From positions 1 to 64,000 of IMG/VR virus record IMGVR_UViG_3300027793_000052: 64,000 bases of DNA. The stretch is one strand, 5' to 3'. Each line of letters opens with the position of its first letter. The first letter of the stretch is position 1. The notes beneath the pieces are model-generated. The model searched no databases. It was not told the DNA's origin and saw only the letters and a list, made by a program, of their open reading frames with translations. A program made the position numbers and the translations under genes. This document shows, in pieces, positions 2,140 to 31,292 of this stretch.

Positions 2140-2181
2140 TTGACATTTAAATAAACTTTTGTATATTTGTATCATATTTAT
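2140..2181 (+). promoter_or_regulatory. Composite promoter of tRNA operon 1 (TTGACA / TAnnTTTG / ATATTTAT)
   Basis: TTGACA 2140, TATATTTG 2162, ATATTTAT 2174; near-identical blocks precede tRNA operons 2 and 3. Confidence 0.7.
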
Positions 2182-2212
2182 TAAACACAAAAAATTATAT
2201 AGTAAACTCACC

Positions 2213-2302
2213 ATGACAAAGGCGACAACATACATTGTTTTAACTCACAGAGAGGAGAGAGAACGTTATCTGACTAACAGTCGGAGTGGATGTCGTATAT
2301 AG
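2213..2302 (+). CDS. Leader peptide 1 (MTKATTYIVLTHREERERYLTNSRSGCRI), putative attenuator uORF
   Basis: ATG..TAG between promoter and terminator; AGA GAG GAG AGA GAA CGT run matches downstream tRNA-Glu and tRNA-Arg. Confidence 0.7.
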   Translation: MTKATTYIVLTHREERERYLTNSRSGCRI

Positions 2303-2326
2303 TCATGTCTCTATATATCAAGATAT

Positions 2327-2358
2327 AAACCCCGATTAAGAGTCGGGGTTTTTTATTT
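2327..2358 (+). terminator. Attenuator-type intrinsic terminator, tRNA operon 1
   Basis: AAACCCCGAT/GTCGGGGTTT hairpin plus T run. Confidence 0.8.
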
Positions 2359-2409
2359 TGGCCAATAAATAAAAAATTTATACTTTTGTAAAAGTTCTTT
2401 GATAAACAA

Positions 2410-2481
2410 GCTCCCGTCGTCTAAAGGCAAGGACACATCTCTTTCACAGATGAAATACGGTTTCAAGATCCGTCGGGAGTA
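2410..2481 (+). tRNA. tRNA-Glu(UUC)
   Basis: GCTCCCG/CGGGAGT acceptor; CATCT-CTTTCAC-AGATG anticodon arm. Confidence 0.85.
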
Positions 2482-2486
2482 CAAAT

Positions 2487-2560
2487 GGTTCCGTAACTCA
2501 ATAGGATAGAGTAACTACCTTCTAAGTAGTAAGTTACAGGTTCGATCCCTGTCGGAATCA
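2487..2560 (+). tRNA. tRNA-Arg(UCU)
   Basis: GGTTCCG/CGGAATC acceptor; ACTAC-CTTCTAA-GTAGT; GGTTCGA T-loop. Confidence 0.9.
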
Positions 2561-2650
2561 CAAAAAAAGTGATAAAAAATTTATAAAGCGTATTGACAGA
2601 AGAGGTTTTTATCACTAGTATTAACAAACAAAAACGATATAGTTCTTTAA

Positions 2651-3169: not shown

Positions 3170-4780
3170 ATGACAAAGTTCAAATCAAAAGCAGTGGAAA
3201 ATTTTGACGGTGGTATTTCTTATACCTTAAACCCATTGGATACATTACGTATCGTGGCAGCATCATCTATCTTTGGTGAACCATCTTATTACAGAGGTTC
3301 TCACGACAAACCATCTAACTTATCTACGTTAAAGACGTATGACGTGTTAGGTTTGTACAAAGACCCAAGTGATACAACTACTGATGTTTTCACTAAGGCT
3401 ATCGACGAGGCTTTAGACTATGACTTCAAGGCAACCCTTGAGTTAGCTAAGACTCTTCGTCACGAACACTTCATGAGGTTAAACCCAGCGGTTATCTTCA
3501 TTAGAGCGTCTCAACACCCAAAGAGGGTTGAATTTAACGAAGCAAACCCAGGTTTGATGAAACAATACGGTTTGGACATTGTTGGTCGTCCTGATGACAT
3601 CACCAACCAATTTGATTACTACATGTTCTTAAACGGTTCTAAGAATGGTTTACCATCTATCGTTAAGAGGACATGGGCTGAGAAGTTGGCGTCTTTCACC
3701 AAGTACCAAATCAAGAAATATAAGTCAAAGTCATTAATTGACTTGGTTCGTATTTCTCACGCACACTCTGAAGTTATCGATGAGTTAATGAAGACTGGTG
3801 ACGTGGCTGTTTCTGAAACTGAAACAACTTGGGAATCACTTAGGTCTCAAGGTAAGACTTGGAAGGAAATTCTTAACACAATTAAGGTTTCACACATGGC
3901 TTTACTTAGGAACTTAAGGGGTATTTTCACTGAGGTGAATGATACTGAAGTGGCTAAGAAGGTTTTAACTGACCTTAAGGCAGGTGTTAAGTTTGGTAAG
4001 CAATTCCCATTCCGTTACTACACAGCTTACAAGGAAATCGATAAGGTTTCTATAAACCACAAGGGTATGATACTTGACGCTTTACAAGAGTGTCTTGACA
4101 TCTCTATCGAAAACTTCCCTAAGTTAAAGGGTAAGGTGGCTTGTTTATCAGATAACTCTGGTTCAGCTTGGGGTACAATGACCTCTGAGTATGGTACAAC
4201 CCATATTGCTGAAATTGCTAACTTATCATCTATCATCACAGCTTTATGTTCTGATGAAGGATATGTCGGTGTCTTTGGTGAAAGATTGAGTTTAAAACCT
4301 GTTTCTAAAAGAGACGGTATTATTACTCAGTTGGAAGAAACTTGTAAGAGAGGTAAGTCTCAAGGACAATCTTGTGAACACGGTATTTGGTTATTCTTAC
4401 GTGAAGCAATCGACACTAAAACTCACTATGATACTATCTTTATTTATAGTGACATGCAGGCAGGACACGGTGGTCTTTACGGTACAAGTGTAAGCCGTGG
4501 TGACGTTCACTCTAGAGGTGGAAGTTATGTAGACGTACTTAAAATGGTACAAGAATACCGTAAGAAGGTTAACCCAAAGGTTAACGTATTCACAGTCCAA
4601 GTGGCTGGATACAACAACTCTGTTGTACCTGAAAACCTTTACAGGGGTTCAGTACTTGGGGGTTGGACTGGTAAGGAAGCCTTATACGCTAGTGAGGTAA
4701 TCAAGACTTGGGATGAAATTGAGTCTAACGACAAGGTTACATCTGAGGTTGAAGTTACTGAACAAGTAGTACAATCTTAA
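3170..4780 (+). CDS. Ro60/TROVE-domain RNA-binding protein (Rsr-like) with vWA domain
   Basis: MALLRNLR, KQFPFRYYTAY, vWA DNSGS and YSDMQ motifs; 536 aa; codon usage (AAC, TTC, CGT) suggests high expression. Confidence 0.9.
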   Translation: MTKFKSKAVENFDGGISYTLNPLDTLRIVAASSIFGEPSYYRGSHDKPSNLSTLKTYDVLGLYKDPSDTTTDVFTKAIDEALDYDFKATLELAKTLRHEHFMRLNPAVIFIRASQHPKRVEFNEANPGLMKQYGLDIVGRPDDITNQFDYYMFLNGSKNGLPSIVKRTWAEKLASFTKYQIKKYKSKSLIDLVRISHAHSEVIDELMKTGDVAVSETETTWESLRSQGKTWKEILNTIKVSHMALLRNLRGIFTEVNDTEVAKKVLTDLKAGVKFGKQFPFRYYTAYKEIDKVSINHKGMILDALQECLDISIENFPKLKGKVACLSDNSGSAWGTMTSEYGTTHIAEIANLSSIITALCSDEGYVGVFGERLSLKPVSKRDGIITQLEETCKRGKSQGQSCEHGIWLFLREAIDTKTHYDTIFIYSDMQAGHGGLYGTSVSRGDVHSRGGSYVDVLKMVQEYRKKVNPKVNVFTVQVAGYNNSVVPENLYRGSVLGGWTGKEALYASEVIKTWDEIESNDKVTSEVEVTEQVVQS

Positions 4781-8614: not shown

Positions 8615-10249
8615 GTGAAAATAAAATTATCCATATTATTTTTTTTATTCAGTTTAATCAATTCGGTTAAGTCACAAGTATCTACATGGTATACATTTTC
8701 TGAAACGGTTGGTACTTATACGGCCATAACAGGTGGTACTCAATTAGTTACCACAACTGCCGGTGCTATAACATATGATACTGACGGTAATAATATCGTT
8801 CTTCCTACCACATCAAGATTTGTCGTAAATGGTATTATCATTACAAATGTAAATATGACTGCGGATGGTTCACTATGGTGTAATCCAGTTACACCGACAT
8901 CTGGTTTTGGTACTACGGGTCCATTACAATCAGGTCAAGATGCGGCTGGTATAATATCAGTTATGGGAATGGATTTACGTAGTACTGCATTAGCTACACA
9001 AGTTTATGAAAGAAGATGGCAAGATGTGGGGACTGAAGTTGTATTTCAATGGCAGAATTGTGCGAGATATCTACAAAGTGGTACGGAAAGATTTTCATTT
9101 CAAATTAGAATAAACAAAACAAATAATCAGATTAGAATGGTATATGGTAATATGACAACCATAGCCAACAGTACCACTTATCAACCACAAGTTGGAATAC
9201 GAGGTCTTACCAATGCTGATTACATAGCCAGACGATTAACTAATTCAGTACCCGATGCATCTCCTAATTGGGGCGCACCTAATGGGACGACTAACGCCAC
9301 TACAAACGCACATACAGTTAGGTTTACATCTAATGGTTCTTGTTTTCCTGTTTCAGGATTAACATTTATATGGTCATATAGCGGTCCTTTATTCAATAAC
9401 GATTTGTGTGAGAATGCAACTCTTGTTACATTACCATATAATAGTGGAGTTGTAACAACGATAGGTTCAAGTACAGATGTTCCGAATGTCGCATCACCCT
9501 GTGACGATTATATTACTCAATCAAATAACTTATGGTATAGAGTAGTTGGTACGGGTAATGATATGACTTTTAATACATGTAACGCCTCTACTAATTTTGA
9601 TTCTGAAATAAGAGTTTATACAGGTGATTGTTCTTCATTAAATAGTATGGTTGAAGTTGTATGTAGTGATGATGATCCAAATTGTACTTCAGGTGGTGTG
9701 TTAGATCCTTCCGTTACGTGGTGTTCATCATTAGGTGTTAATTATTTTATATCTGTCGGATATTACACAGTTACAAGTACATTAAGTACTGGTAATTACG
9801 TATTAAGTGGTGTAGAAGGAGGTTCTTGTTCATCACTACCAGTAGAACTAATTCATTTTTCCGGTAAAGGATTTGAACATTATAATTTATTAAGGTGGAA
9901 AACCGCCACAGAAATAAATAATGACCATTTCACACTTGAAAGAAGTTTAGATGGAATTAGATTTCAAGAAATACAACAAATTGATGGTATGGGTAATTCT
10001 AATGTAATTCAAGAATACTCGACACGTGATTTTGAACTAAATACAGGGTTAATATATTACAGACTTATACAAACAGATTATGATGGTACACGTACCTATT
10101 CAGATATAATTGTAATTAATAGAGACCCTTACAAATCACTTAAGGTTGTTAGAATTACAAATGTATTAGGTCAAGACATAAATGAATGGAGTCCAGGTAT
10201 TAAACTCTATCATTATAGTGATGGTAGTATTGAAAAGAGAATAGAATAA
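8615..10249 (+). CDS. Secreted beta-rich protein with T9SS-type C-terminal region
   Basis: GTG start, signal peptide, LPVELIHF...WKTATEINNDHFTLERS...YYRLIQTDYDG and terminal NVLGQ..G..YSDG..EK typical of Bacteroidota T9SS cargo. Confidence 0.7.
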   Translation: MKIKLSILFFLFSLINSVKSQVSTWYTFSETVGTYTAITGGTQLVTTTAGAITYDTDGNNIVLPTTSRFVVNGIIITNVNMTADGSLWCNPVTPTSGFGTTGPLQSGQDAAGIISVMGMDLRSTALATQVYERRWQDVGTEVVFQWQNCARYLQSGTERFSFQIRINKTNNQIRMVYGNMTTIANSTTYQPQVGIRGLTNADYIARRLTNSVPDASPNWGAPNGTTNATTNAHTVRFTSNGSCFPVSGLTFIWSYSGPLFNNDLCENATLVTLPYNSGVVTTIGSSTDVPNVASPCDDYITQSNNLWYRVVGTGNDMTFNTCNASTNFDSEIRVYTGDCSSLNSMVEVVCSDDDPNCTSGGVLDPSVTWCSSLGVNYFISVGYYTVTSTLSTGNYVLSGVEGGSCSSLPVELIHFSGKGFEHYNLLRWKTATEINNDHFTLERSLDGIRFQEIQQIDGMGNSNVIQEYSTRDFELNTGLIYYRLIQTDYDGTRTYSDIIVINRDPYKSLKVVRITNVLGQDINEWSPGIKLYHYSDGSIEKRIE

Positions 10250-12531: not shown

Positions 12532-12578
12532 TTGACAAGTAATAAACTTTTACTATCTTTGTATCATATTTATTAACA
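12532..12578 (+). promoter_or_regulatory. Composite promoter of tRNA operon 2
   Basis: 47 nt identical to 17274-17320; TTGACA, TATCTTTG, ATATTTAT. Confidence 0.75.
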
Positions 12579-12595
12579 GTAACAGAATTAAACAA

Positions 12596-12688
12596 ATGAA
12601 GACTTTAACAAACATATTATTCGTGATGACACTAACGGTGTTATTTCAGTTTACACAAACTGAACTCGGGTTCTTATGTCTAAGTTAA
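12596..12688 (+). CDS. Leader peptide 2 (MKTLTNILFVMTLTVLFQFTQTELGFLCLS)
   Basis: 22 of 29 non-start codons are Q/F/M/T/V/L, the amino acids of the downstream tRNAs. Confidence 0.8.
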   Translation: MKTLTNILFVMTLTVLFQFTQTELGFLCLS

Positions 12689-12713
12689 TCATTTAATATA
12701 TTAACAAATTTAG

Positions 12714-12748
12714 AAGAACCCGAGAAAAACTCTCGGGTTTTTTTATTT
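12714..12748 (+). terminator. Attenuator terminator, tRNA operon 2
   Basis: AACCCGAGA/TCTCGGGTT plus T run; left arm also pairs perfectly (11 bp) with 12665-12675. Confidence 0.85.
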
Positions 12749-12753
12749 TATAT

Positions 12754-12827
12754 TATCCCGTCGCCTAATTGGCATGGCACTAGATTTTGACTCTAGCATA
12801 GTACAGGTTCGAACCCTGTCGGGATAA
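12754..12827 (+). tRNA. tRNA-Gln(UUG)
   Basis: CTAGA-TTTTGAC-TCTAG; TATCCCG/CGGGATA. Confidence 0.88.
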
Positions 12828-12857
12828 CCGAAGAAGTTATTTGACATATTATATTTT

Positions 12858-12930
12858 GTGGAAGTTACCAAGTTGGTCAAGGTGTTGGTCTGAAAAACCA
12901 ATTATATGAGTTCGATTCTCATCTTCCACA
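12858..12930 (+). tRNA. tRNA-Phe(GAA)
   Basis: TTGGT-CTGAAAA-ACCAA; GTGGAAG/CTTCCAC. Confidence 0.88.
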
Positions 12931-13061
12931 CAACAAGCCGTAGGTATGAATAAGTATATATATATATATATAATATTATTTTAATAACTTATTTAATCAT
13001 TAATTAAAATAATCATCTAAAGTTCGATAATTTTTATCGATATATAATGATATTTATTACT

Positions 13062-13895
13062 ATGAAATGGTATAAAAAAGATATTGAAACATTGATTGAA
13101 TTAATTCGTCAAGGTAACACCTATGATGAAATAGGTGTTATAATGAAAAGAAGTAGATCTTCTATTAAAGCTAAATTATTAAAATTGGGTGAGACATATA
13201 GAAAGTATTCTGAAAACAATTATTATGAAAAGGTTAATTGTAAAAATTGTGGTATAGAATTTAAATCTTTAATGTCTAATAAACAAAAATTTTGTAACCA
13301 TACATGTGCTGCAAGTTATAATAATGTAATTAGAGGTAAAAGAAGTCAAGAAACAAAAAATAAAATAAGTAAATCATTAAAAAGTAAAAAAAAGGAGAAA
13401 TATGATTTAAATCCTAAAAAATGTATGAAATGTGGTGAACATATACCATATAGTAAATGGTGTAATTATAGAAAAAATTGTGACGAATGTAACATTATTA
13501 TTCGTAAAAATATGGGTAGGATTTTAGGTCAAAAAACCTCACAAACCAAAATAAAAAGATCGAAAGACGAGATAAATTTATATGAGTTATGTAAGATGAG
13601 TTTTAACGATGTTGAACATAATAAAATAATAAGTTCTGGATGGGATGCTGATATTGTTATAAATGATTATAAAATACTTATACTATGGAATGGTCCTTGG
13701 CATTATAAACAGTTACCATTAAAAAACCATAGTTTAAATCAAGTACAAACTAGAGATAAAATAAAACAAAAATTGTTTGAAAGTTTAGGTTGGAGAGTTA
13801 TAATATTTGAAGATAGATATTACACACCATATACAGCTTTTGATTATTTAAAAAATATAATTCGGGATATATCTCCCCACTCTCATAAGGTGTAG
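13062..13895 (+). mobile_element. Putative free-standing homing endonuclease (Cys-rich DNA-binding repeats plus Vsr/PD-(D/E)xK-like C-terminus)
   Basis: CKNC...FCNHTC, WDADIV..ILILWNGPWHY, RDKIK..GWRV; inserted inside a tRNA cluster. Confidence 0.6.
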
Positions 13896-13941
13896 AAAGA
13901 GTAATTGGCAACATGTGAGTTCAACTCTCACTATCCCGACA
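13862..13941 (+). ncRNA. Atypical tRNA-like RNA with CAU anticodon loop and no normal D-arm
   Basis: 8-bp TCGGGATA/TATCCCGA stem, CTCATAA loop, GTGAG-TTCAACT-CTCAC T-arm; only ~7 nt between acceptor and anticodon arm. Confidence 0.55.
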
Positions 13942-13985
13942 AAATAATGGTTCGATCTGTTCAAATCAGATATACGGTACTATAT

Positions 13986-14059
13986 TCCGGTGATACTCTG
14001 AAGGTAAGGGTGCTCGCCTTGTAAGCGAGATTTAGTCGGTTCGATCCCGACCACCGGAT
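13986..14059 (+). tRNA. tRNA-Thr(UGU)
   Basis: CTCGC-CTTGTAA-GCGAG; TCCGGTG/CACCGGA. Confidence 0.88.
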
Positions 14060-14064
14060 CAAAA

Positions 14065-14135
14065 GCCCTGATGACGTAATGGTAGCGTACTAATTTTACA
14101 TGTTAGCAGCAAAGGTTCAATTCCTTTTCAGGGCA
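14065..14135 (+). tRNA. tRNA-Val(UAC)
   Basis: CTAAT-TTTACAT-GTTAG; GCCCTGA/TCAGGGC. Confidence 0.8.
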
Positions 14136-14141
14136 CAAAAA

Positions 14142-14218
14142 GCCTTCGTGACGTAATTGGTAACCGTGTTAGTTTTAGAAACTAAATTTTGTGAGTTCAA
14201 ATCTCACCGAAGGCACCA
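14142..14218 (+). tRNA. tRNA-Leu(UAG), short variable loop, CCA encoded
   Basis: TTAGT-TTTAGAA-ACTAA; GCCTTCG/CGAAGGC. Confidence 0.85.
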
Positions 14219-14266
14219 AAAATTTTGATAATAAATAAACTTTTACTATATTTGTATCAACAAAAT

Positions 14267-14340
14267 GTTCCCATGGCGAAATTGGTAAACGCAACGAGTT
14301 TAAGCCTCGTATGTTCTCGGTTCAAATCCGGGTGGGAATA
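14267..14340 (+). tRNA. tRNA-Leu(UAA), short variable loop
   Basis: ACGAG-TTTAAGC-CTCGT; has its own TATATTTG promoter just upstream. Confidence 0.82.
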
Positions 14341-14556
14341 CAAAACATTGACGATATGGCGTGTAGGTGTAACTCGTTATAACACCGAGGGGAACATATG
14401 GTATACGAGAAACCATTGTGGTGTGTCTGAAGGGTCAATGTTGATATGGGGTGAGAATCTTAGTTGGCCACTAAGAAAATATGGAAGGGTGTCGCGTTAC
14501 CCAATCGGCTCAAATCCGATCCACTCCACTTTGGGTTATTTTTTGACCAAAAAATA

Positions 14557-14830
14557 ATGAGTAAGAGATACTCAAGAGTTGGGCTACTGGTCTATATCGC
14601 GTGGCAGTCTAGATGAGTGATGAGACTTTAAACTTCACCCCTTGGGTTAAAGGAGAAACATCGAACTCCTCCATTGTACGGTTGACAGGTTTTTATGTGG
14701 TAAGACACTAATGTAAACTCATAGAATTACCGATTAGAGACAAAGGGCTCTTCTGCAGGTGTTATGAGATGGTTCTCGAAACAGTCAGAGAAACCCGTTA
14801 AAATCTAATCCTCAAAGTAATCTCATTTGG
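14557..14830 (+). ncRNA. Unidentified structured RNA
   Basis: Non-coding and GC-enriched; nested stems AATGAG/CTCATT, GATTAGA/TCTAATC, GGG-CTCT/AGAG-CCC. Confidence 0.4.
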
Positions 14831-14839
14831 GGTAAAAAT

Positions 14840-14941
14840 AGTCAGGTGGCGTAATTGGTAACCGCTATAGGGTTGAGGCGTGCTAACTACCTATATAAAT
14901 TGTTTTTAAACAATGCAGGTTCGAGTCCTGTCCTGACTACA
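14840..14941 (+). ncRNA. tRNA-like RNA, AGTCAGG family copy 1 (aberrant anticodon arm)
   Basis: AGTCAGG/CCTGACT acceptor, CAGGTTCGAGTCCTG T-arm, no 7-nt anticodon loop. Confidence 0.65.
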
Positions 14942-15057: not shown

Positions 15058-15160
15058 AGTCAGGTGGTGAAATTGGTAGCCACAGCATATAAGACCATGG
15101 GCGTTGTGTTGAAACCTACTGGGGATTAGATTTACAGGTTCGAGTCCTGTCCTGACTACA
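15058..15160 (+). ncRNA. tRNA-like RNA, AGTCAGG family copy 2
   Basis: Same acceptor and T-arm, unrelated central region. Confidence 0.65.
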
Positions 15161-15384
15161 CGAGTCGAGTTGTGTTCGACTAATGTGCTCCCGCATGATG
15201 GAAGTGGTGTCACACCCACAGGGACCTGAGCCGATTACTTGAATCTAAGTCGGTTGGTTGGTGTACCAGTAACAGGAGGAAGTTAACACACAAGTCCTAA
15301 CCCCTCACGTAAGTGGGTTGCCGCTGAAGCCTCGAGAAGCTATTCGGTATTGGGGACAGTCAGAAATGATTGGGCGAAAATTAT

Positions 15385-15461
15385 AGTCAGGTGGTAGAAT
15401 TGTGATTACACCTTGGGACGAATGTCTAGGAGATACAGGTTCGAATCCTGTCCTGACTACA
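15385..15461 (+). ncRNA. tRNA-like RNA, AGTCAGG family copy 3
   Basis: Same acceptor and T-arm; central hairpin with 4-nt loop. Confidence 0.6.
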
Positions 15462-15492: not shown

Positions 15493-15975
15493 ATGGTACT
15501 AATACTTAACGCTGACTACACACCATTAACTGTGGCTAACTTTAAAAGAGCCTACAGATTAGTGTATAAAGGTAAGGCAGAAATAGTGGTTTCTCATGGT
15601 AAAGTTGATGCTGGTATAATATTGGATAAGCCTTCCATAATTAGATTAATTAAATATGTTTACTTTCCATATAAAAAAGTAACCTTATCAAGGTATAACA
15701 TTTATAGAAGGGATGAACATAAGTGTTTATATTGTGGATCCAAAGATAATTTAACGTTAGACCATGTTATACCAAGAAGTAAGGGTGGGCCAAACAGTTG
15801 GACAAACTTGGTGACATGTTGTATGAGATGTAATATGTTAAAGGGTGATAGAACACCTGATGAGGCAGGAATGGTATTATCACATAAACCATTTACACCT
15901 AATTATTTATATTTTATAAACAAAATGCATAAAATACATGAAGAATGGAAACCTTATTTAATGGATGATAAATAA
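15493..15975 (+). CDS. HNH endonuclease (McrA-like)
   Basis: CLYCG..LTLDHVIPRSKGG..WTNLVTCCMRCN; AGGAGG upstream. Confidence 0.85.
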   Translation: MVLILNADYTPLTVANFKRAYRLVYKGKAEIVVSHGKVDAGIILDKPSIIRLIKYVYFPYKKVTLSRYNIYRRDEHKCLYCGSKDNLTLDHVIPRSKGGPNSWTNLVTCCMRCNMLKGDRTPDEAGMVLSHKPFTPNYLYFINKMHKIHEEWKPYLMDDK

Positions 15976-16163: not shown

Positions 16164-16213
16164 AAAATACTTGACAGGAGATAAAAATTAATATATAATT
16201 GTATCATTAATAT

Positions 16214-16285
16214 CGCGATGAGGGTGTTGGTTCCCCACCGGTCTCATAAACCAGGTCCACGGCCGTTCGATTCGGCCCGTCGCCA
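16214..16285 (+). tRNA. tRNA-Met(CAU), possibly initiator type
   Basis: CTCATAA loop; C1:C72 mismatch in acceptor stem; anticodon stem lacks the usual three G-C pairs. Confidence 0.75.
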
Positions 16286-16382
16286 CTAAGTCCCCTATAG
16301 TATTATAGGGGATTTTTTTTAACATTAAAGACAACTTGACAAATTTAACAATCATAACGATATTTATATAAAAAGATATACC

Positions 16383-17030: not shown

Positions 17031-17261
17031 GTGATGAACCGTATAAACAAAGAAAGACTCGCAACCATAAGCTTAATTTTGGCAATGTTCTTCAACCCTC
17101 TAGGGTTCGACGCACTATTCAACGCTGTAATGACATTGACAGGTTCTTATTGGATTACGGATATAATATTTTACCTTATATCACTATCGTTTCTTGGGTT
17201 ATATTTCTTATTACAAGGTATTAACCCAATAAAACACGTAAAAGAAAAAATAAAAAAATAA
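17031..17261 (+). CDS. Small membrane protein
   Basis: Two hydrophobic segments. Confidence 0.5.
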   Translation: MMNRINKERLATISLILAMFFNPLGFDALFNAVMTLTGSYWITDIIFYLISLSFLGLYFLLQGINPIKHVKEKIKK

Positions 17262-17273
17262 TTTAAAAAATAG

Positions 17274-17320
17274 TTGACAAGTAATAAACTTTTACTATCT
17301 TTGTATCATATTTATTAACA
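17274..17320 (+). promoter_or_regulatory. Composite promoter of tRNA operon 3
   Basis: 47 nt identical to 12532-12578. Confidence 0.75.
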
Positions 17321-17338
17321 AACAAAACAATTAAAGAA

Positions 17339-17434
17339 ATGAAAAATTGGCATAACATATCGAGTATACATAGTAATCGAATTAATAGTTCGGTGTACAC
17401 ATGGTGTGTTTTGTCCAATCAAGATAATACTTAA
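17339..17434 (+). CDS. Leader peptide 3 (MKNWHNISSIHSNRINSSVYTWCVLSNQDNT)
   Basis: Codons 3-18 are 16 consecutive N/W/H/I/S/R, the amino acids of the downstream tRNAs. Confidence 0.82.
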   Translation: MKNWHNISSIHSNRINSSVYTWCVLSNQDNT

Positions 17435-17459
17435 TGGGAATTAAGTTTTTTGTACAAGG

Positions 17460-17496
17460 AAAACCCACCACATGAAAATGTCGGTGGGTTTTTTGT
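17460..17496 (+). terminator. Attenuator terminator, tRNA operon 3
   Basis: AAAACCCACC/GGTGGGTTTT plus T run; competing strand at 17401-17412. Confidence 0.8.
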
Positions 17497-17522
17497 TATT
17501 TGACATATTGGTAAATTAAAAT

Positions 17523-17611
17523 GGAGAGTTAAGCAGATGCATTGGAGCGTCGACCAGCTTTGAAACCTGGGTCTCGTTAAGTCGGGTGGGGGTCGGGTCC
17601 TCAGCTCTCCG
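17523..17611 (+). tRNA. tRNA-Ser(UGA)
   Basis: TTTGAAA loop, long variable arm, GGAGAGT/GCTCTCC. Confidence 0.75.
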
Positions 17612-17617
17612 CAAAAT

Positions 17618-17706
17618 GGTGTTAGAGTCGGATATTGGTTAGCCGAGCTTGTCTGTGAAACAAGTGTTCTTTAGTGAACGTGCGGGTTCAATCCCCGTCT
17701 ATCACC
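17618..17706 (+). tRNA. tRNA-His(GUG)
   Basis: CTTGT-CTGTGAA-ACAAG; G-1:C73 pair; enlarged variable region. Confidence 0.8.
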
Positions 17707-17713
17707 CAAATAC

Positions 17714-17788
17714 GGGTCTGTAGTACTAATTGGATAAAACTTTCGGCTGTTAACCGAGATGATGTGAGTTCGAGTCTCACTGGACCCG
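17714..17788 (+). tRNA. tRNA-Asn(GUU) copy 1
   Basis: TTCGG-CTGTTAA-CCGAG. Confidence 0.85.
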
Positions 17789-17795
17789 CTGATTT

Positions 17796-17871
17796 GGACT
17801 GTAAGCTGACAAGGGGTAGCTGTGGCCTGTTAAGCCAAGGGTGGTGGGTTCGATTCCCACACAGTCCGCCA
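17796..17871 (+). tRNA. tRNA-Asn(GUU) copy 2, CCA encoded
   Basis: TGGC-CTGTTAA-GCCA; GGACTGT/ACAGTCC. Confidence 0.85.
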
Positions 17872-17874
17872 AAC

Positions 17875-17946
17875 GGGGGTATAGCTCAGTGGTAGAGCAG
17901 AGAGCTGTTAACTCTAAGGTCGTAGGTTCAATCCCTTCTACCCCCG
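17875..17946 (+). tRNA. tRNA-Asn(GUU) copy 3
   Basis: AGAG-CTGTTAA-CTCT; canonical D-arm. Confidence 0.9.
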
Positions 17947-17953
17947 CAAATAT

Positions 17954-18026
17954 AGTATCGTGTCTGAACGGTTTAGGAACTATCCTGATAAGATAGGAAA
18001 AGTGGGTTCAACTCCCACCGATACTA
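17954..18026 (+). tRNA. tRNA-Ile(GAU)
   Basis: CTATC-CTGATAA-GATAG. Confidence 0.85.
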
Positions 18027-18033
18027 CTAAAAT

Positions 18034-18107
18034 ACATCTGAGACCATATAGGAATTGGTACTGGCTTCCAAACCCAGTTGTTGCAGGTTCGAATCCTGTC
18101 AGATGTG
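18034..18107 (+). tRNA. tRNA-Trp(CCA)
   Basis: TTCCAAA loop; ACATCTG/CAGATGT. Confidence 0.8.
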
Positions 18108-18112
18108 CAAAA

Positions 18113-18202
18113 GGAAGATAGGTAAATATTGGTTTGTTACAGCATCCTGCTAAGATGTCCCGGGTAATACCGGTGAGGGTTCAATTCCCTTGTCTTCCGC
18201 CA
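18113..18202 (+). tRNA. tRNA-Ser(GCU), CCA encoded
   Basis: GCATC-CTGCTAA-GATGT; long variable arm. Confidence 0.88.
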
Positions 18203-18205
18203 AAT

Positions 18206-18293
18206 GGAGAGTTAAGGAAGGGAGTGGTTCCCTCGCTTGTTTGGAAAACAAGAACCCATTAAGTTGGGCACAGTTCGACTCTGTATCTCTCCG
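18206..18293 (+). tRNA. tRNA-Ser(GGA)
   Basis: CTTGT-TTGGAAA-ACAAG; long variable arm. Confidence 0.85.
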
Positions 18294-18303
18294 CTAATAA
18301 CAT

Positions 18304-18375
18304 GGGCGTGTCATATAAGGGTTATTATGCGAAGCTTATACCTTCGTCAAGGTGGCTCAACTCCACCCACGCCTA
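18304..18375 (+). tRNA. tRNA-Ile(UAU)
   Basis: CGAAG-CTTATAC-CTTCG; GGGCGTG/CACGCCT. Confidence 0.78.
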
Positions 18376-18380
18376 CAAAT

Positions 18381-18455
18381 GGTTCCATAGTGTAATTGGA
18401 TAACACGCAAAGCTACGAACTTTGAGACTTGAGGGTTCAAATCCTTCTGGAACTA
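18381..18455 (+). tRNA. tRNA-Arg(ACG)
   Basis: CAAAG-CTACGAA-CTTTG. Confidence 0.88.
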
Positions 18456-18460
18456 CTAAC

Positions 18461-18487
18461 AAACCCACCCCATGGTGGGTTTTTTTA
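18461..18487 (+). terminator. Terminator ending tRNA operon 3
   Basis: AAACCCACC/GGTGGGTTT plus T run. Confidence 0.8.
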
Positions 18488-18522
18488 TTTACATATGCCC
18501 CTAGTTTAAGTATAATTTATAT

Positions 18523-19041
18523 ATGATTAAAAATAGTATTCCTGAACATAGAATGGGTGTACATGTTTCTGTACCGATAGAAGATATTAGACAGAACATG
18601 GATTTTGGTAATATAATCCAACCTAGATGGTTATTAACAATACCACACAATCATGGTTTATATCAGTATTTAGTAAAAACAGATGGTCCATCAGTGGTAA
18701 CAGTTGGTAATATTGATTTTGGTGTACCAAGATTGGAATGGCAACCATTAAAATTAACCGTTGTAAGATGTGATGATTATGACACCACAAATACTATAAC
18801 TTATACCAGTGGTACAATTACATTAGGTGATAGTCCTTTAGATGTAATCAGAAATTGGATGATGAGTTATGAAAAGAAAAATATTAGGTTGGAAAAAATA
18901 AACCATAATGGTTTATGGCATGAAAGGTTTGATATAAGAGGTTCATTTATAACAGAAATGAATCATGAGGTAATTATGGATAGGGAGATCAGTCAAATGG
19001 AGATAACAATAAATTTTGACCATTTACAGTATATATTATGA
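18523..19041 (+). CDS. Divergent T4 gp19-like tail tube paralog
   Basis: EWQPLKLT..VIRNWM..KKNIRLEKINHNG..ERFDIRGSFITE..EITINFD resembles the gp19-type pattern. Confidence 0.45.
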   Translation: MIKNSIPEHRMGVHVSVPIEDIRQNMDFGNIIQPRWLLTIPHNHGLYQYLVKTDGPSVVTVGNIDFGVPRLEWQPLKLTVVRCDDYDTTNTITYTSGTITLGDSPLDVIRNWMMSYEKKNIRLEKINHNGLWHERFDIRGSFITEMNHEVIMDREISQMEITINFDHLQYIL

Positions 19042-20541: not shown

Positions 20542-20760
20542 TAATCCTTATATTTGTATAAGAAATAAAAATACATAACATAAATTTAACATAAGCGTTG
20601 ACAAATAAATAAAACTTTATTAATTTTGTCCATATTTATTTATAGAAGTTGTGGTTCTGATGGGTTTCAGGAACCACCCCAAAAAAGACAGATACAGAAC
20701 GGGGACTGTTTACAACGAAAACCCCACAAAAAAAACTATAAACAAATTAAAACTAAAAAA

Positions 20761-20868
20761 ATGAGAAAGAATTACACATATCAACCGAGTACACCGAAAG
20801 CAGGGAAAGTAGCCGATAAAGGCTGTGATACCTTGAATGGTTGTGGTATGTACAATTCTGTCTCATAA
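20761..20868 (+). CDS. Leader peptide 4 (MRKNYTYQPSTPKAGKVADKGCDTLNGCGMYNSVS)
   Basis: 11 of 12 codons in PKAGKVADKGCD are from the Y/P/D/G/A/C/K set of downstream tRNAs. Confidence 0.78.
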   Translation: MRKNYTYQPSTPKAGKVADKGCDTLNGCGMYNSVS

Positions 20869-20892
20869 GAATATATAGAGAAGAGTTTAAAT

Positions 20893-20930
20893 AACCCCCA
20901 CAACCGATAAAAAAGTTGTGGGGGTTTTTG
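20893..20930 (+). terminator. Attenuator terminator, tRNA operon 4
   Basis: AACCCCCACAAC/GTTGTGGGGGTT plus T run; competing GGTTGTGG at 20839-20846. Confidence 0.85.
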
Positions 20931-20943
20931 TTTATAGTTATAC

Positions 20944-21025
20944 CCGTAAGTTGAACAGGTGGTGAGTTCCGTTGACTGTAGATCAACCGTTTTAAACTGT
21001 GGGGGTTCGATTCCCTCCTTACGGA
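20944..21025 (+). tRNA. tRNA-Tyr(GUA)
   Basis: GTTGA-CTGTAGA-TCAAC; variable arm. Confidence 0.85.
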
Positions 21026-21045
21026 CAAAAACGTTCATTGAAAAT

Positions 21046-21169
21046 AAAAAGAATAGAAGCGGTGGTATTGGTTACATCGATAATGGATATCAATTTGACA
21101 GCAAATCAAACGTTGTGGGTTCGAGTCCCATGATAAAAAACACCGATATTTTTATTCTCTGTTCTTTTT
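21046..21169 (+). ncRNA. tRNA-Cys-like body closed by a Y-like stem
   Basis: GAAGCGGT-N8-TTACATC motif, D-like hairpin, TTTGA-CAGCAAA-TCAAA, GTGGG-TTCGAGT-CCCAT; no normal acceptor stem. Confidence 0.55.
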
Positions 21170-21175
21170 AAATAT

Positions 21176-21254
21176 ATGGGGTTGGAGGAGTCAGGTTTTC
21201 CTCGCTTGGTTTGGGACCAAGAGACTTGCGTGGGTTCAAATCCCACACCCCATA
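21176..21254 (+). tRNA. tRNA-Pro(UGG)
   Basis: CTTGG-TTTGGGA-CCAAG. Confidence 0.82.
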
Positions 21255-21260
21255 CAAAAC

Positions 21261-21338
21261 GGATACGGCGCATAACGGCTGGTGTACCTGACTGTCTATC
21301 AGGTTTTAAGAGGGTTCGACTCCCTTCGTATCCGCCAA
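21261..21338 (+). tRNA. tRNA-Asp(GUC), CCA encoded
   Basis: CCTGA-CTGTCTA-TCAGG. Confidence 0.88.
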
Positions 21339-21340
21339 TG

Positions 21341-21410
21341 CGGGATTAGCATAAAGTTAATGTACTAGTCTTCCAAACTAGTGAAGTCGGATAGTTACCG
21401 GCATCCCGCT
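21341..21410 (+). tRNA. tRNA-Gly(UCC)
   Basis: CTAGT-CTTCCAA-ACTAG; GCGGGAT/ATCCCGC, U73; non-canonical T-loop. Confidence 0.78.
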
Positions 21411-21420
21411 CTAAAATTAT

Positions 21421-21495
21421 GGGCTACATCCCGAAGGCAGGGCACTTGATTTGCACTCAAGTGAAAACGGTAGGGTTCGATTCCCTCGTGGTCCA
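21421..21495 (+). tRNA. tRNA-Ala(UGC)
   Basis: CTTGA-TTTGCAC-TCAAG; G3-U70. Confidence 0.85.
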
Positions 21496-21509
21496 CAAAT
21501 ATAATAAAA

Positions 21510-21600
21510 GGGTCTGTGGTGTGAGTGGTTTAAACCACCTGTCTGCAAAACAGGGATGACAATTAATTTTGTTACGTCAGTTCGAATCTGACCAGACCCT
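21510..21600 (+). tRNA. tRNA-Cys(GCA) with long variable arm
   Basis: CCTGT-CTGCAAA-ACAGG; U73. Confidence 0.82.
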
Positions 21601-21612
21601 CTAAAAAATAAA

Positions 21613-21687
21613 GACCTCGTAACTTAGTTGGTTTAAAGTGCTAATCTTTTAAATTAGAAATCGTGAGTTCGAATCTCACCGGGGTCA
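21613..21687 (+). tRNA. tRNA-Lys(UUU)
   Basis: CTAAT-CTTTTAA-ATTAG. Confidence 0.88.
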
Positions 21688-21688
21688 C

Positions 21689-30868: not shown

Positions 30869-31259
30869 GGGGGTGACTTGGAATTGATTGGCTACATTAG
30901 TTATTGTAAAAGCATGTCGAGACTTGTTTGTAGGCTCGTTAAACCAACAATCAAAATTTTAAATGGCGACATTTTCGCAGACGCTACTGTAGGTCACTTT
31001 GTGACTGAAGGTGCAGAGGTTGTAGCCTAATTAGATTAGGGTACACAACGGGGTTGGATTACCTAGGAACAGAAGTCCAAAAAAGGGTGTTACCACTACC
31101 ACAAAAGGGTAAAGTCAAACATGGAATGTGTCAACTAAGTCCATGGGAGAACTAAAAGATGAAGTTGTATATTTTGGGTGGTTAGAAAACCACATCCTAA
31201 ACATGTAGAAGACTTTAATTCATTAGAACAAGACGGCGGTTCGACCCCGCTCACCTCCA
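30869..31259 (+). ncRNA. ssrA: tmRNA
   Basis: GGGGGTG/CACCTCC-A acceptor with G3-U70, GCATGTCGAG after helix 2, GACGGCGGTTCGACCCCGC T-arm; tag ORF 30965-31030. Confidence 0.92.
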
Positions 31260-31292
31260 CTTTAGAAATTTATTAACCTAAAAATCGAAAAA

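What the first reader, a model, noticed from the sequence alone, without database searches (positions are those of the whole stretch)
17339..18487. Attenuator 3: 16 consecutive codons drawn only from the six amino acids of the 11 downstream tRNAs
Seen: NWHNISSIHSNRINSS uses ATA (cluster has Ile-UAU), ATT (Ile-GAU), AGT (Ser-GCU), TCG (Ser-UGA) and CGA (Arg-ACG), so the match extends to isoacceptor level. ATGGTGTGTTTT (17401-17412) can pair with the terminator left arm.
Basis: partly seen in the sequence, partly recalled or inferred. Interest (0 to 1): 0.8.

Follow-up and report, generated by a model that had tools for sequence, protein, structure and literature searches.

The report
Leader-peptide attenuators controlling phage tRNA operons
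A giant freshwater phage puts a tiny test gene and a stop signal in front of each block of its own tRNA genes, and the test gene is written in exactly the codons those tRNAs read, so the phage apparently makes more tRNAs only when ribosomes run short of them, a use of attenuation I found described nowhere.

Summary
A 31-codon ORF (17339-17434) has 16 consecutive codons (17345-17392) for only N, W, H, I, S and R, the six amino acids served by the tRNA genes that follow (10 firm, 1 doubtful). This is the longest such run in all six frames of the window (next longest 9-10; P about 5e-10 per position). An intrinsic terminator (17459-17494) lies between the ORF and the tRNAs.

The unit is one of four in the window. 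Each has the same promoter type, a small ORF, a terminator and a tRNA operon, and each leader is enriched only in its own operon's amino acids.

Relatives that split their tRNAs into different operons have leaders that follow the split, down to isoacceptor codons (ATA vs ATY, AGR vs CGN, TCN vs AGY). Nine distinct homologous peptides vary only within the six-residue set. The antiterminator pairing is kept in 93.7% of cells across 11 homologues, with two compensatory changes. Metatranscriptome contigs run from leader through terminator into the tRNAs.

Best explanation: classical ribosome-mediated attenuation, redeployed so that tRNA supply controls tRNA gene transcription. Ten full-text searches found no prior description. 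No experiment has been done. I rate it a new variant of a known kind, of high interest.

The parts
17274..17310 (+). Promoter of the unit: TTGACA (17274-17279), 16-nt spacer, TATCTT (17296-17301). The second hexamer also reads as TAnnTTTG (17296-17303). It is followed by the conserved TGTATCAT, and the likely transcription start is about 17306-17310.
   Evidence: Consensus scan gives 10 of 12 matches. The same promoter type precedes L1, L2 and L4, the putative tRNA-Met 16214 and tRNA-Leu 14267. It is conserved in homologues. The start site is inferred from the two tRNAs that begin 8-12 nt after TGTATCA.
17339..17434 (+). Leader ORF L3, 31 codons plus TAA. There is no Shine-Dalgarno motif and the 5' UTR is A-rich.
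   Evidence: The ORF is kept in 11 distinct homologues, and indels inside the codon run are multiples of 3. Only 3 of 60 long ORFs in the window have a Shine-Dalgarno motif.
17345..17392 (+). Regulatory run: 16 codons for N, W, H, I, S and R only (N x4, S x5, I x3, H x2, W x1, R x1).
17346..17419 (+). Hairpin 1:2. Region 1 (17346-17371, inside the codon run) pairs with region 2 (17393-17419). It is capped by a small conserved hairpin at 17378-17392.
   Evidence: Minimum-free-energy and centroid folds, z = -5.6. Pair counts: helix 1 is 78% paired and the apical helix 98% paired.
17398..17474 (+). Antiterminator 2:3. 17398-17414 pairs with 17458-17474, which is the terminator's left arm.
   Evidence: It forms in truncated transcripts when a ribosome footprint sits on codons 2-14. 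It is 93.7% paired in 11 homologues with 2 compensatory pairs, against at most 60% in slid controls. Its energy is not above chance in this copy.
17459..17496 (+). Attenuator terminator: stem 17459-17473 / 17478-17493 with one bulged C, then TTTTTTGTT.
   Evidence: dG -17.3 kcal/mol. Helix 88% paired with 3 compensatory pairs. The simple scan misses it because of the bulge.
17523..17612 (+). tRNA-like element with a UGA (Ser) anticodon. Doubtful or degenerate.
   Evidence: Not called by ARAGORN or Rfam. Degenerate T-loop compared with the orthologues in L004 and L062. No cloverleaf fold.
17620..18456 (+). Ten tRNA genes: His-GUG 17620-17708, Asn-GUU 17714-17789, 17796-17871 and 17875-17947, Ile-GAU 17954-18027, Trp-CCA 18034-18108, Ser-GCU 18113-18202, Ser-GGA 18206-18294, Ile-UAU 18304-18376, Arg-ACG 18381-18456.
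18461..18490 (+). Terminator at the end of the operon.
   Evidence: 9 pairs followed by a T-run. RNA contigs have a hole at 18415-18540 in all four runs.
2142..2561 (+). Sister unit 1: promoter, leader L1 (2213-2302, core REERE = AGA GAG GAG AGA GAA), terminator 2321-2358, then tRNA-Glu(UUC) and tRNA-Arg(UCU).
   Evidence: Antiterminator duplex beaten by 0 of 1000 shuffles.
12532..14341 (+). Sister unit 2: promoter, leader L2 (12596-12688, 21 of 29 residues from Q, F, T, V, L), terminator 12711-12745, then tRNAs Gln, Phe, (inserted ORF), Thr, Val, Leu-UAG and Leu-UAA.
   Evidence: An 11-bp perfect antiterminator, beaten by 0 of 1000 shuffles.
20597..21688 (+). Sister unit 4: promoter, long 5' UTR, leader L4 (20761-20868, 19 of 34 residues from Y, P, D, G, A, C, K, all seven present), terminator 20893-20926, then tRNAs Tyr, Pro, Asp, Gly, Ala, Cys and Lys.

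Best explanation
The region 17274-18490 is a tRNA operon governed by a ribosome-mediated (leader-peptide) transcription attenuator.

**Proposed sequence of events.**
- Transcription starts about 30 nt before a 31-codon ORF. Codons 3-18 of that ORF are read by the tRNA isoacceptors encoded downstream.
- If those charged tRNAs are plentiful, the ribosome runs through the ORF. Region 2 is then either covered by the ribosome or re-captured by region 1 behind it. The terminator (17459-17494) forms and the tRNA genes are not transcribed.
- If any of those tRNAs is scarce, the ribosome stalls on region 1. Region 2 (17398-17414) is left free and pairs with the terminator's left arm. RNA polymerase then reads through into the tRNA genes.
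- With no translation at all, hairpin 1:2 forms and termination is the default.

**Net effect.** This is negative feedback: the phage makes a block of tRNAs on demand and stops when supply is restored.

**System level.** The window holds four such operons plus a leaderless putative tRNA-Met. Together they cover all 20 amino acids, and each operon has its own matched sensor.

**Shown here by computation:** the anatomy, the statistics, conservation, co-variation of leader and tRNA set, alternative pairings with compensatory changes, and the existence of read-through RNA.

**Inferred:** that the ORF is translated, that stalling occurs, that read-through responds to tRNA supply, and the biological purpose.
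For: 1. **Enrichment in L3.** A run of 16 cognate codons, the longest in six frames; P = 4.6e-10 per position; 20 of 30 residues in set, binomial p = 2e-5.
2. **Internal replication.** In the 4 leaders x 4 tRNA sets matrix, only the diagonal is enriched (-log10 p of 2.0, 6.5, 4.7 and 2.0; off-diagonal at most 0.8). Every amino acid of every set appears in its own leader.
3. **Co-variation across lineages**.
   - L018/L020 operon [Ser-UGA, Arg-UCU, Pro, Ile-UAU, Met, Leu-UAA]: the leader contains ILNILPSILRPSIRRS.
   - L018/L020 operon [Glu, Asp, Met, Leu-UAG]: the leader has a core rich in E, D and L.
   - L020 16-tRNA operon: the leader (L020:15897-16004) opens with 29 straight in-set residues covering all 16 amino acids.
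   - L055 operon [Ala, Phe, Lys, Met, Cys, Gly, Trp, His]: the leader contains KKCWHMFGFAGK.
4. **Isoacceptor resolution**.
   - Arg codons are 14 AGR to 2 CGN in leaders of Arg-UCU operons, and 0 to 4 in leaders of Arg-ACG/GCG operons (Fisher p = 0.003).
   - In L020, Ile is ATA 4/4 in one leader and ATY 3/3 in the other; Ser is TCN 4/4 against AGY 3/3 (p = 0.029 each).
   - CGA is 3% of Arg codons and TCG 4% of Ser codons in the phage's own genes.
5. **L3 homologues.** Nine distinct peptides in 17 metagenome loci have substitutions and 3-nt indels confined to the set. 14 of the 17 loci are followed by the same kind of tRNA cluster.
6. **Switch logic.** In 15 units from at least 6 lineages, a footprint on the early codons gives 2:3 pairing and a footprint on the late codons frees the left arm. 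Antiterminator duplexes beat shuffles at p < 0.05 in 9 of 15 units. For L3, 2:3 is 93.7% paired with 2 compensatory pairs and a covariation score above all 500 shuffles.
7. **Folding.** All four leaders fold far better than shuffles, z = -5.1 to -6.2.
8. **RNA.** In 4 metatranscriptomes, single contigs span leader, terminator and tRNAs (17291 or 17340 to 18414). Their depth differs from flanking genes by up to about 14-fold (2-fold to 14-fold across the four runs), and there is a hole at the operon end.
Against: - No experiment exists. Translation of the ORF and any response to tRNA supply are unproven.
- The window's own L3 antiterminator is no stronger than chance in energy (p = 0.44). In full-length transcripts the terminator is always the minimum-free-energy state, so the switch must be kinetic.
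- The codon choices CGA and TCG are confounded with the stem of a conserved small hairpin.
- Some units are only weakly enriched over the whole peptide: L020 D2 p = 0.13, L006 p = 0.18, L055 F2 p = 0.66.
- Several leaders carry a single codon for some of their amino acids (W and R in L3). That is less than the tandem runs of classical attenuators and may give low sensitivity.
- The RNA contigs carry only a contig-wide mean depth, so the termination ratio cannot be read from them, and some DNA carry-over cannot be excluded.
- Close relatives of the same module lack the units: Bacillus phage G, L026 and L034-L051.
Confidence: 0.8

Rival explanations
1. This is a true ribosome-mediated attenuator, but what it reports is amino-acid starvation or general slowing of translation in the host, not the level of the phage's own tRNAs. 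On this view the tRNA operons are simply switched on under translational stress, and the codon match has no feedback meaning.
For: A stalled ribosome cannot tell a missing tRNA from an uncharged one (established knowledge of trp and his attenuation). An inducible tRNA array that responds to translational stress is known in Anabaena (PMC8421152).
Against: A general stress sensor would not need leaders whose composition follows each operon's tRNA set and isoacceptors, nor leaders that are re-written when tRNAs move between operons. Making more tRNA does not relieve amino-acid starvation.
Confidence: 0.1
2. The codon triplets are read directly by tRNA anticodons on naked leader RNA, without a ribosome, in the manner of a T-box with many specifiers. 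The ORF would be incidental.
For: Codon-anticodon complementarity is all that the composition data strictly show.
Against: - There is no T-box or other riboswitch match in Rfam at gathering level in the window, or at E <= 1 on the leader.
- ATG and stop are conserved, there is an in-frame stop just upstream, and indels occur only in multiples of 3.
- The footprint model reproduces the switch in 15 units.
- No Stem-I-like platform is present, and no NCCA-binding bulge was seen.
Confidence: 0.04
3. The hairpin and terminator are a constitutive partial terminator or an RNA-processing or stability element of the tRNA precursor. The small ORFs would be untranslated and their composition chance or base-composition bias.
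For: The genome is AT-rich (30% G+C), so N, I and S are common. Terminators before tRNA genes could simply insulate them from upstream transcription.
Against: - The run is the longest in all six frames and far beyond shuffles.
- Only the diagonal of the matrix is enriched.
- Rare residues (W, H, C, M) appear exactly where their tRNAs are downstream.
- 47 chance ORFs with the same first 7 residues show 35% in-set residues against 96% in the true homologues.
Confidence: 0.03
4. The small ORFs encode functional micro-proteins, for example membrane or regulatory peptides, and their position before tRNA genes is coincidental.
For: L2 is hydrophobic and could look like a membrane peptide.
Against: The four peptides share no sequence. 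Their only common property is the match to the downstream tRNAs. The conserved part of L3 (CVLS, encoded by GTGTGTTTTGTC) is conserved as RNA pairing with compensatory changes, while the codon run varies freely within the set.
Confidence: 0.03

Closest known systems
Ribosome-mediated attenuators of amino-acid biosynthetic operons (trpL, hisL, leuL, pheL; the multivalent thrL and ilvL/ivbL) in Proteobacteria
   Same: A short leader ORF with regulatory codons, a 1:2 hairpin, a mutually exclusive 2:3 antiterminator and 3:4 intrinsic terminator, and termination as the default without translation. Multivalent sensing of several amino acids, as in thrL (Thr + Ile) and ilvL (Leu, Val, Ile). This description of the classical systems is from my own knowledge.
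   Different: - The regulated genes are tRNAs, not enzymes, so the molecule sensed at the ribosome is the operon's own product.
- Up to 16 amino acids are sensed by one leader (L020:15897-16004).
- Codons are chosen at isoacceptor level.
- There are few or single codons per amino acid rather than tandem runs.
- The leader stop codon lies beyond region 2.
- The elements are encoded by a phage.
- There is no sequence or Rfam relationship.
Leader-peptide attenuation of aminoacyl-tRNA synthetase genes (pheM-pheST in E. coli; the His leader before hisS paralogues in bacilli, PMC2965389)
   Same: A component of the translation apparatus is regulated by a leader peptide rich in the cognate codon.
   Different: One amino acid and one protein gene are involved there. 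Here whole tRNA operons with 2-16 specificities are regulated. PMC2965389 contains no occurrence of 'tRNA gene', 'tRNA operon' or 'rRNA operon'.
T-box riboswitches
   Same: They also read tRNA status through codon-anticodon pairing and choose between terminator and antiterminator.
   Different: T-boxes are ribosome-independent, use one specifier codon, have a conserved Stem I and T-box sequence, and sense the uncharged tRNA. None of these features is present here, and there is no Rfam hit.
Inducible tRNA L-array (trn operon) of Anabaena sp. PCC 7120 (PMC8421152)
   Same: A supernumerary, horizontally mobile tRNA operon that is silent by default and induced when translation is impaired.
   Different: The terms attenuat-, leader, terminator and small ORF do not occur in that paper's main text. 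There is one operon and no codon-matched sensor.
tRNA gene clusters of other large phages (Bacillus phage G, T4-like phages)
   Same: Bacillus phage G has the same neighbourhood of a TROVE/Ro-like protein, tRNAs and tmRNA.
   Different: No leader-terminator units stand before the phage G tRNAs. Phage G gp554, an 18-aa ORF before tRNA-Gly, has one Gly and no terminator.

Membership tests
Ribosome-mediated (leader-peptide) transcription attenuator | A short translatable ORF in the 5' leader of the regulated transcript | tested here: met
   The ORF is at 17339-17434 with an in-frame stop two codons upstream. It is kept in 11 distinct homologues, with indels only in multiples of 3. Translation itself was not tested.
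Ribosome-mediated (leader-peptide) transcription attenuator | Regulatory codons cognate to what the operon supplies, enriched beyond chance | tested here: met
   A run of 16, P = 4.6e-10 per position, the longest in six frames. The 4x4 matrix is enriched on the diagonal only. Co-variation with the tRNA set is seen in other lineages.
Ribosome-mediated (leader-peptide) transcription attenuator | An intrinsic terminator between the leader ORF and the first regulated gene | tested here: met
   Hairpin 17459-17493 plus a T-run, dG -17.3 kcal/mol, 88% paired in homologues. The first tRNA-like gene starts at 17523.
Ribosome-mediated (leader-peptide) transcription attenuator | A mutually exclusive antiterminator whose 5' strand is held by the codon region or masked by a translating ribosome | tested here: met
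   Footprint-constrained folds. 93.7% of cells paired, with 2 compensatory pairs. Weak point: the duplex energy in this copy is not above chance.
Ribosome-mediated (leader-peptide) transcription attenuator | Read-through rises when the cognate charged tRNA is limiting | not testable with these tools
   Only the existence of read-through RNA is shown.
Classical amino-acid-operon leader families of Rfam (Trp, His, Leu, Phe, Thr leaders) | A match to the family's covariance model, with regulated genes that are biosynthetic enzymes | tested here: not met
   No match on the leader at E <= 1. Only sub-threshold Phe_leader and Leu_leader hits fall on the operon-end terminator at 18409-18488. The regulated genes are tRNAs.
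T-box riboswitch | Stem I with a specifier loop and a conserved T-box sequence (Rfam model) | tested here: not met
   No T-box hit at gathering level in the window or at E <= 1 in 17250-18520.

The most novel reading that the evidence does not exclude
A jumbo phage carries tRNAs for all 20 amino acids, split into four operons plus a leaderless putative tRNA-Met. Each operon would be closed-loop regulated by its own leader peptide, which samples exactly the isoacceptors that operon makes. That would be the first case of tRNA genes as the output of ribosome-mediated attenuation. It would give the phage tRNA homeostasis independent of its host. It could also act as a built-in alarm that raises phage tRNA output when host tRNAs are degraded, whether by host shut-off or by tRNA-cleaving defence systems. 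The leaders are re-written in evolution whenever tRNA genes move between operons.
Probability: 0.55. Interest if true: 0.9.

Novelty: new variant of a known kind. Interest (0 to 1): 0.86.

Why it matters
**Regulation of tRNA genes.** tRNA transcription in bacteria and phages is usually treated as promoter-level or constitutive. Here the ribosome itself would measure tRNA supply and set tRNA gene transcription, isoacceptor by isoacceptor.

**An open question about phage tRNAs.** Why do large phages carry tRNAs, and when do they need them? This finding suggests the tRNAs are made on demand. It would also make the question testable, because the leaders state which codons the phage treats as limiting.

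**Scope of attenuation.** The finding extends leader-peptide attenuation to a new class of regulated genes, to sensing of up to 16 amino acids by one leader, and to phages whose host probably lacks Shine-Dalgarno-led initiation. The host is inferred to be Bacteroidota.

**Practical uses.** The units are compact, natural, codon-specific sensors of tRNA availability. They could serve as reporters for tRNA depletion by anticodon nucleases or for codon-specific translation speed.

Tried and rejected
1. **DNA search of GenBank phages.** Only generic tRNA-level similarity turned up, with no relatives.
2. **PHROG and Pfam on 19 ORFs.** Almost nothing was annotated. The hits were a TROVE/Ro-like protein and an HNH endonuclease. 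No help came for taxonomy.
3. **Plain minimum-free-energy folding with a ribosome footprint on full-length leaders.** The terminator is always present, so thermodynamics alone does not show a switch. I replaced this with transcripts truncated before the terminator's 3' arm.
4. **Simple terminator scan.** It misses the L3 attenuator terminator because of a bulge, so I relied on folding instead.
5. **A remembered precedent.** I recalled that E. coli tRNA-Phe genes pheU and pheV have an attenuator-like leader.
   - The old paper could not be fetched.
   - The K-12 pheV upstream region shows only a promoter directly before the tRNA and no leader ORF.
   - I make no claim of a precedent.
6. **Promoter-motif scan of viral contigs.** It returned mostly unrelated AT-rich hits and only relatives I already had.
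7. **Degenerate leader pattern in metagenomes.** The hits were mostly chance. I kept them as a negative control, and 17 were true homologues.
8. **Search for the system in more distant relatives.** L026, L034-L051 and Bacillus phage G have none.
9. **L055 units F2 and F3 and a far-upstream ORF in L036.** They are not convincing leaders.
10. **RNA contigs.**
    - They cannot give the ratio of terminated to read-through transcripts.
    - The contig breaks at 17291-17320 are assembly forks at the repeated promoter, not transcription starts.
11. **Ten literature searches.** None found a description of leader-peptide control of tRNA genes. The library lacks most subscription journals.
Full report
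**What is there**

The window is part of IMGVR_UViG_3300027793_000052, a 318-kb phage contig with 30% G+C. At 17339-17434 there is a 31-codon ORF (ATG to TAA). An in-frame TAA lies two codons upstream, so the ORF cannot start earlier.

Codons 3-18 (17345-17392) read NWHNISSIHSNRINSS. The ORF is preceded by a promoter-like site: TTGACA, 16 nt, TATCTT at 17274-17301. It is followed by a strong hairpin plus T-run at 17459-17496.

A row of tRNA genes follows:
- His-GUG
- three Asn-GUU
- Ile-GAU
- Trp-CCA
- Ser-GCU
- Ser-GGA
- Ile-UAU
- Arg-ACG

A second terminator closes the operon at 18461-18490.

It is not called by ARAGORN or Rfam, its T-loop is degenerate and it does not fold as a cloverleaf. 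Relatives have a good tRNA-Ser(UGA) at that position.

**Is it more than chance?**

The six residues make up 29.0% of the residues in the window's long ORFs. Codons readable by the cluster's tRNAs make up 26.1% of codons.

| Measure | Value |
|---|---|
| P(16 in a row), residue level | 2.5e-9 |
| P(16 in a row), codon level | 4.6e-10 |
| Codon-level P times all 128,000 six-frame positions | about 6e-5 |
| Next longest run in six frames | 10 (residues), 9 (codons) |
| Longest run inside the 60 long ORFs | 6 |
| 300 codon-shuffled proteomes | mean 7, maximum 11 |

The run of 16 is the longest in all six frames of the 64 kb.

**Four units, not one**

Every tRNA cluster in the window has the same layout: a promoter of the same type, a small ORF, a terminator, then the tRNAs.

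| Leader | Coordinates | Downstream tRNAs |
|---|---|---|
| L1 | 2213-2302 | Glu-UUC, Arg-UCU |
| L2 | 12596-12688 | Gln, Phe, Thr, Val, Leu-UAG, Leu-UAA |
| L3 | 17339-17434 | this finding |
| L4 | 20761-20868 | Tyr, Pro, Asp, Gly, Ala, Cys, Lys |

I scored each leader against each operon's amino-acid set. Only the diagonal is enriched (-log10 binomial p of 2.0, 6.5, 4.7 and 2.0), and every off-diagonal cell is at most 0.8. Every amino acid of every set occurs in its own leader, including rare ones such as W, H and C.

With the putative leaderless tRNA-Met at 16214-16286, the four operons cover all 20 amino acids.

I fetched relatives in three ways: through a neighbouring TROVE/Ro-like protein, through the upstream ORF, and through a leader DNA pattern in metagenomes.

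*Same tRNA set, homologous leader.* Nine distinct peptides occur in 17 metagenome loci, plus further ones in L004, L061 and L062.
- All keep a run of 15-17 in-set residues.
- Their differences are substitutions among S, N, I and H, and 3-nt indels, so they stay inside the set.
- 14 of the 17 loci are followed by the same kind of tRNA cluster.
- The same scan also returned 47 unrelated ORFs that share the first seven residues by construction. These have 35% in-set residues at positions 8-18 against 96% in the homologues, and none has a tRNA downstream.

*Different tRNA grouping.* Leaders follow the grouping.

| Locus | Operon | Leader |
|---|---|---|
| L018/L020 (61% identity in the marker protein) | Ser-UGA, Arg-UCU, Pro, Ile-UAU, Met, Leu-UAA | contains ILNILPSILRPSIRRS |
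| L018/L020 | Glu, Asp, Met, Leu-UAG | core rich in E, D and L |
| L020 | 16 tRNAs | L020:15897-16004; first 29 residues after Met all in the set, all 16 amino acids covered; E, P and D (served by the other operons) appear only at the 3' end |
| L055 | Ala, Phe, Lys, Met, Cys, Gly, Trp, His | contains KKCWHMFGFAGK |

An unbiased detector (a terminator at most 130 nt before a tRNA, with a small ORF ending at most 90 nt before the terminator) recovers these units.

**Isoacceptor level**

- Leaders of Arg-UCU operons use 14 AGR and 2 CGN codons. Leaders of Arg-ACG/GCG operons use 0 AGR and 4 CGN (Fisher p = 0.003).
- In L020 the operon with Ile-UAU, Ser-UGA and Leu-UAA has ATA 4/4, TCN 4/4 and TTA. 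The operon with Ile-GAU and Ser-GCU has ATY 3/3 and AGY 3/3 (p = 0.029 each).
- CGA is 3% of Arg codons and TCG 4% of Ser codons in the phage's genes.

One caveat applies to L3. CGA and TCG also form the stem of a small, nearly invariant hairpin (17378-17392), so in L3 itself codon choice and RNA structure cannot be separated.

**The RNA switch**

All four leaders fold much better than shuffles, with z = -5.1 to -6.2. Each folds as a long hairpin over the ORF (1:2) plus the terminator (3:4).

With the whole transcript present, the terminator is always the most stable state. Any switch must therefore be kinetic, as in classical attenuators.

I folded transcripts cut just before the terminator's 3' arm, with a 29-nt ribosome footprint held unpaired.
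- With the footprint on codons 2-14 of L3, 9-10 of the 13 left-arm bases pair with 17399-17411.
- With the footprint further along, or with no ribosome, the left arm is free.
- The same pattern holds for 15 units from at least six lineages, although their sequences are unrelated.

The antiterminator duplex beats dinucleotide shuffles in most units: 0 of 1000 shuffles for L1 and L2, and p < 0.05 in 9 of 15 units overall. It does not in the window's L3 (p = 0.44).

For L3 the support is comparative. On 11 distinct homologues:
- the 2:3 helix is paired in 93.7% of cells, against 38-60% when partners are slid by 1-3 columns;
- two pairs change on both sides (A-U to U-A, G-C to A-U);
- the covariation score exceeds all 500 shuffles.

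Hairpin 1:2 and the terminator also show compensatory pairs. These counts use a structure derived from the window sequence and related sequences, which inflates them somewhat.

**Expression**

The phage is present in many freshwater metagenomes and in seven metatranscriptome runs. In four RNA runs:
- single contigs run from 17291 or 17340 through the ORF and the terminator to 18414;
- their depth differs from the flanking genes by up to about 14-fold (2-fold to 14-fold across the four runs);
- all four runs have a hole at 18415-18540, where the operon terminator and the next promoter lie.

This pattern looks like RNA rather than DNA carry-over, and it shows that read-through transcripts exist. 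The contigs carry one mean depth each, so the fraction terminated at 17494 cannot be read.

**How it most likely works**

This is ribosome-mediated attenuation with tRNA genes as the output.
- Plentiful cognate charged tRNA: the ribosome clears the codon run. Region 2 is masked or recaptured by region 1, the terminator forms, and no tRNA is made.
- Shortage of any one of the operon's isoacceptors: the ribosome stalls on region 1. Region 2 pairs with the terminator's left arm, and the operon is transcribed.
- No translation: termination.

*Shown here (computationally):* the anatomy, the statistics, conservation, leader/tRNA co-variation, alternative pairings with compensatory changes, and read-through RNA.

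*Inferred:* translation of the ORF, stalling, the response itself, and the purpose.

The leaders lack Shine-Dalgarno motifs, but so do 57 of the 60 long ORFs. Together with a TAnnTTTG-like -10 region, this suggests a Bacteroidota host. That host assignment is an inference.

**Comparison with what is known**

The mechanism is that of the trp, his, leu, thr and ilv leaders (my knowledge of those systems). It is not a member of any Rfam leader family or of the T-box family.

It differs from the classical cases in these ways:
- what is regulated (tRNAs);
- the loop it closes (the product is the molecule sensed);
- the number of specificities per leader (2 to 16);
- its isoacceptor resolution;
- its being phage-encoded.

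The nearest analogue in logic is the stress-inducible tRNA array of Anabaena. The terms attenuat-, leader, terminator and small ORF do not occur in that paper's main text (PMC8421152).

The cultured Bacillus phage G shares the TROVE-tRNA-tmRNA neighbourhood but has no such units. More distant metagenomic relatives also lack them. The design therefore looks like an innovation of one clade of uncultured freshwater jumbo phages.

Ten full-text searches found no description of leader-peptide control of tRNA genes. The library lacks most subscription journals, so an older report cannot be excluded. A precedent I half-remembered for E. coli pheV was not borne out by the K-12 sequence.

**Verdict**

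I rate it a new variant of a known kind, of high interest. My confidence that it works as a tRNA-supply attenuator is about 0.8, pending any experiment.

Noticed in passing
window 30869-31262 (+): A full-length tmRNA gene (Rfam RF00023, 82 bits) is encoded by the phage. Bacillus phage G has a tmRNA in the equivalent tRNA neighbourhood.
   Followed up: no
window 14840-14939, 15058-15158, 15385-15459 (+): Three tRNA-like genes share the same acceptor stem (AGTCAGG...CCTGACTA). Two have insertions of about 25-30 nt and one has an 8-nt anticodon loop (ARAGORN gives a four-base anticodon, cgaa). They are separated by G+C-richer non-coding stretches (14345-14835 and 15160-15384) with no Rfam match. 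A TROVE/Ro-like protein is encoded nearby (3170-4780), so Y-RNA-like partners are one idea. I did not test it.
   Followed up: partly
window 17620-17708 and 21510-21601 (+): tRNA-His(GUG) is 89 nt and tRNA-Cys(GCA) is 92 nt, both with long variable arms. That is unusual for these specificities. The His gene scores only 22 bits with the Rfam tRNA model.
   Followed up: no
window 16171-16315 and 14222-14341 (+): A putative tRNA-Met(CAU) has a perfect TTGACA-17-TATAAT promoter and its own terminator. tRNA-Leu(UAA) has a copy of the leader-type promoter directly in front of it. Neither has a leader ORF, so not all tRNAs are under attenuator control.
   Followed up: partly
window 13047-13895 and 15493-15975 (+); L011, L012, L061: ORFs sit between tRNA genes inside the operons. 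One is an HNH endonuclease by Pfam. Relatives carry similar insertions at different places, which suggests mobile endonuclease genes invading the tRNA arrays. A tRNA-like sequence with a CAU anticodon (about 13868-13945) overlaps the end of the first ORF.
   Followed up: no
window 17495-17510, 12842-12856; L018 about 8716-8745: The motif TTTGACATATTGG-like recurs just after attenuator terminators and between two tRNA genes. Its function is unknown; it could be an internal promoter -35 element or a processing signal.
   Followed up: no
window 20620-20760 (+): Unlike L1-L3, leader L4 has a 5' UTR of about 140 nt. It has G+C-rich segments that resemble the L4 terminator arms, which may be an extra layer of alternative pairing.
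   Followed up: no
whole window: Only 3 of 60 long ORFs have a Shine-Dalgarno-like motif, and the promoter -10 regions read TAnnTTTG. Together these point to a Bacteroidota host for this freshwater jumbo phage. The phage occurs in many freshwater metagenomes and also in runs labelled fungus and sediment metagenomes.
   Followed up: partly
window 17345-17392 vs 17523-18456: The number of codons per amino acid in the L3 run (S 5, N 4, I 3, H 2, W 1, R 1) follows the number of tRNA genes for it downstream (Ser 3 including the doubtful one, Asn 3, Ile 2, His 1, Trp 1, Arg 1). With six points this is suggestive only.
   Followed up: no
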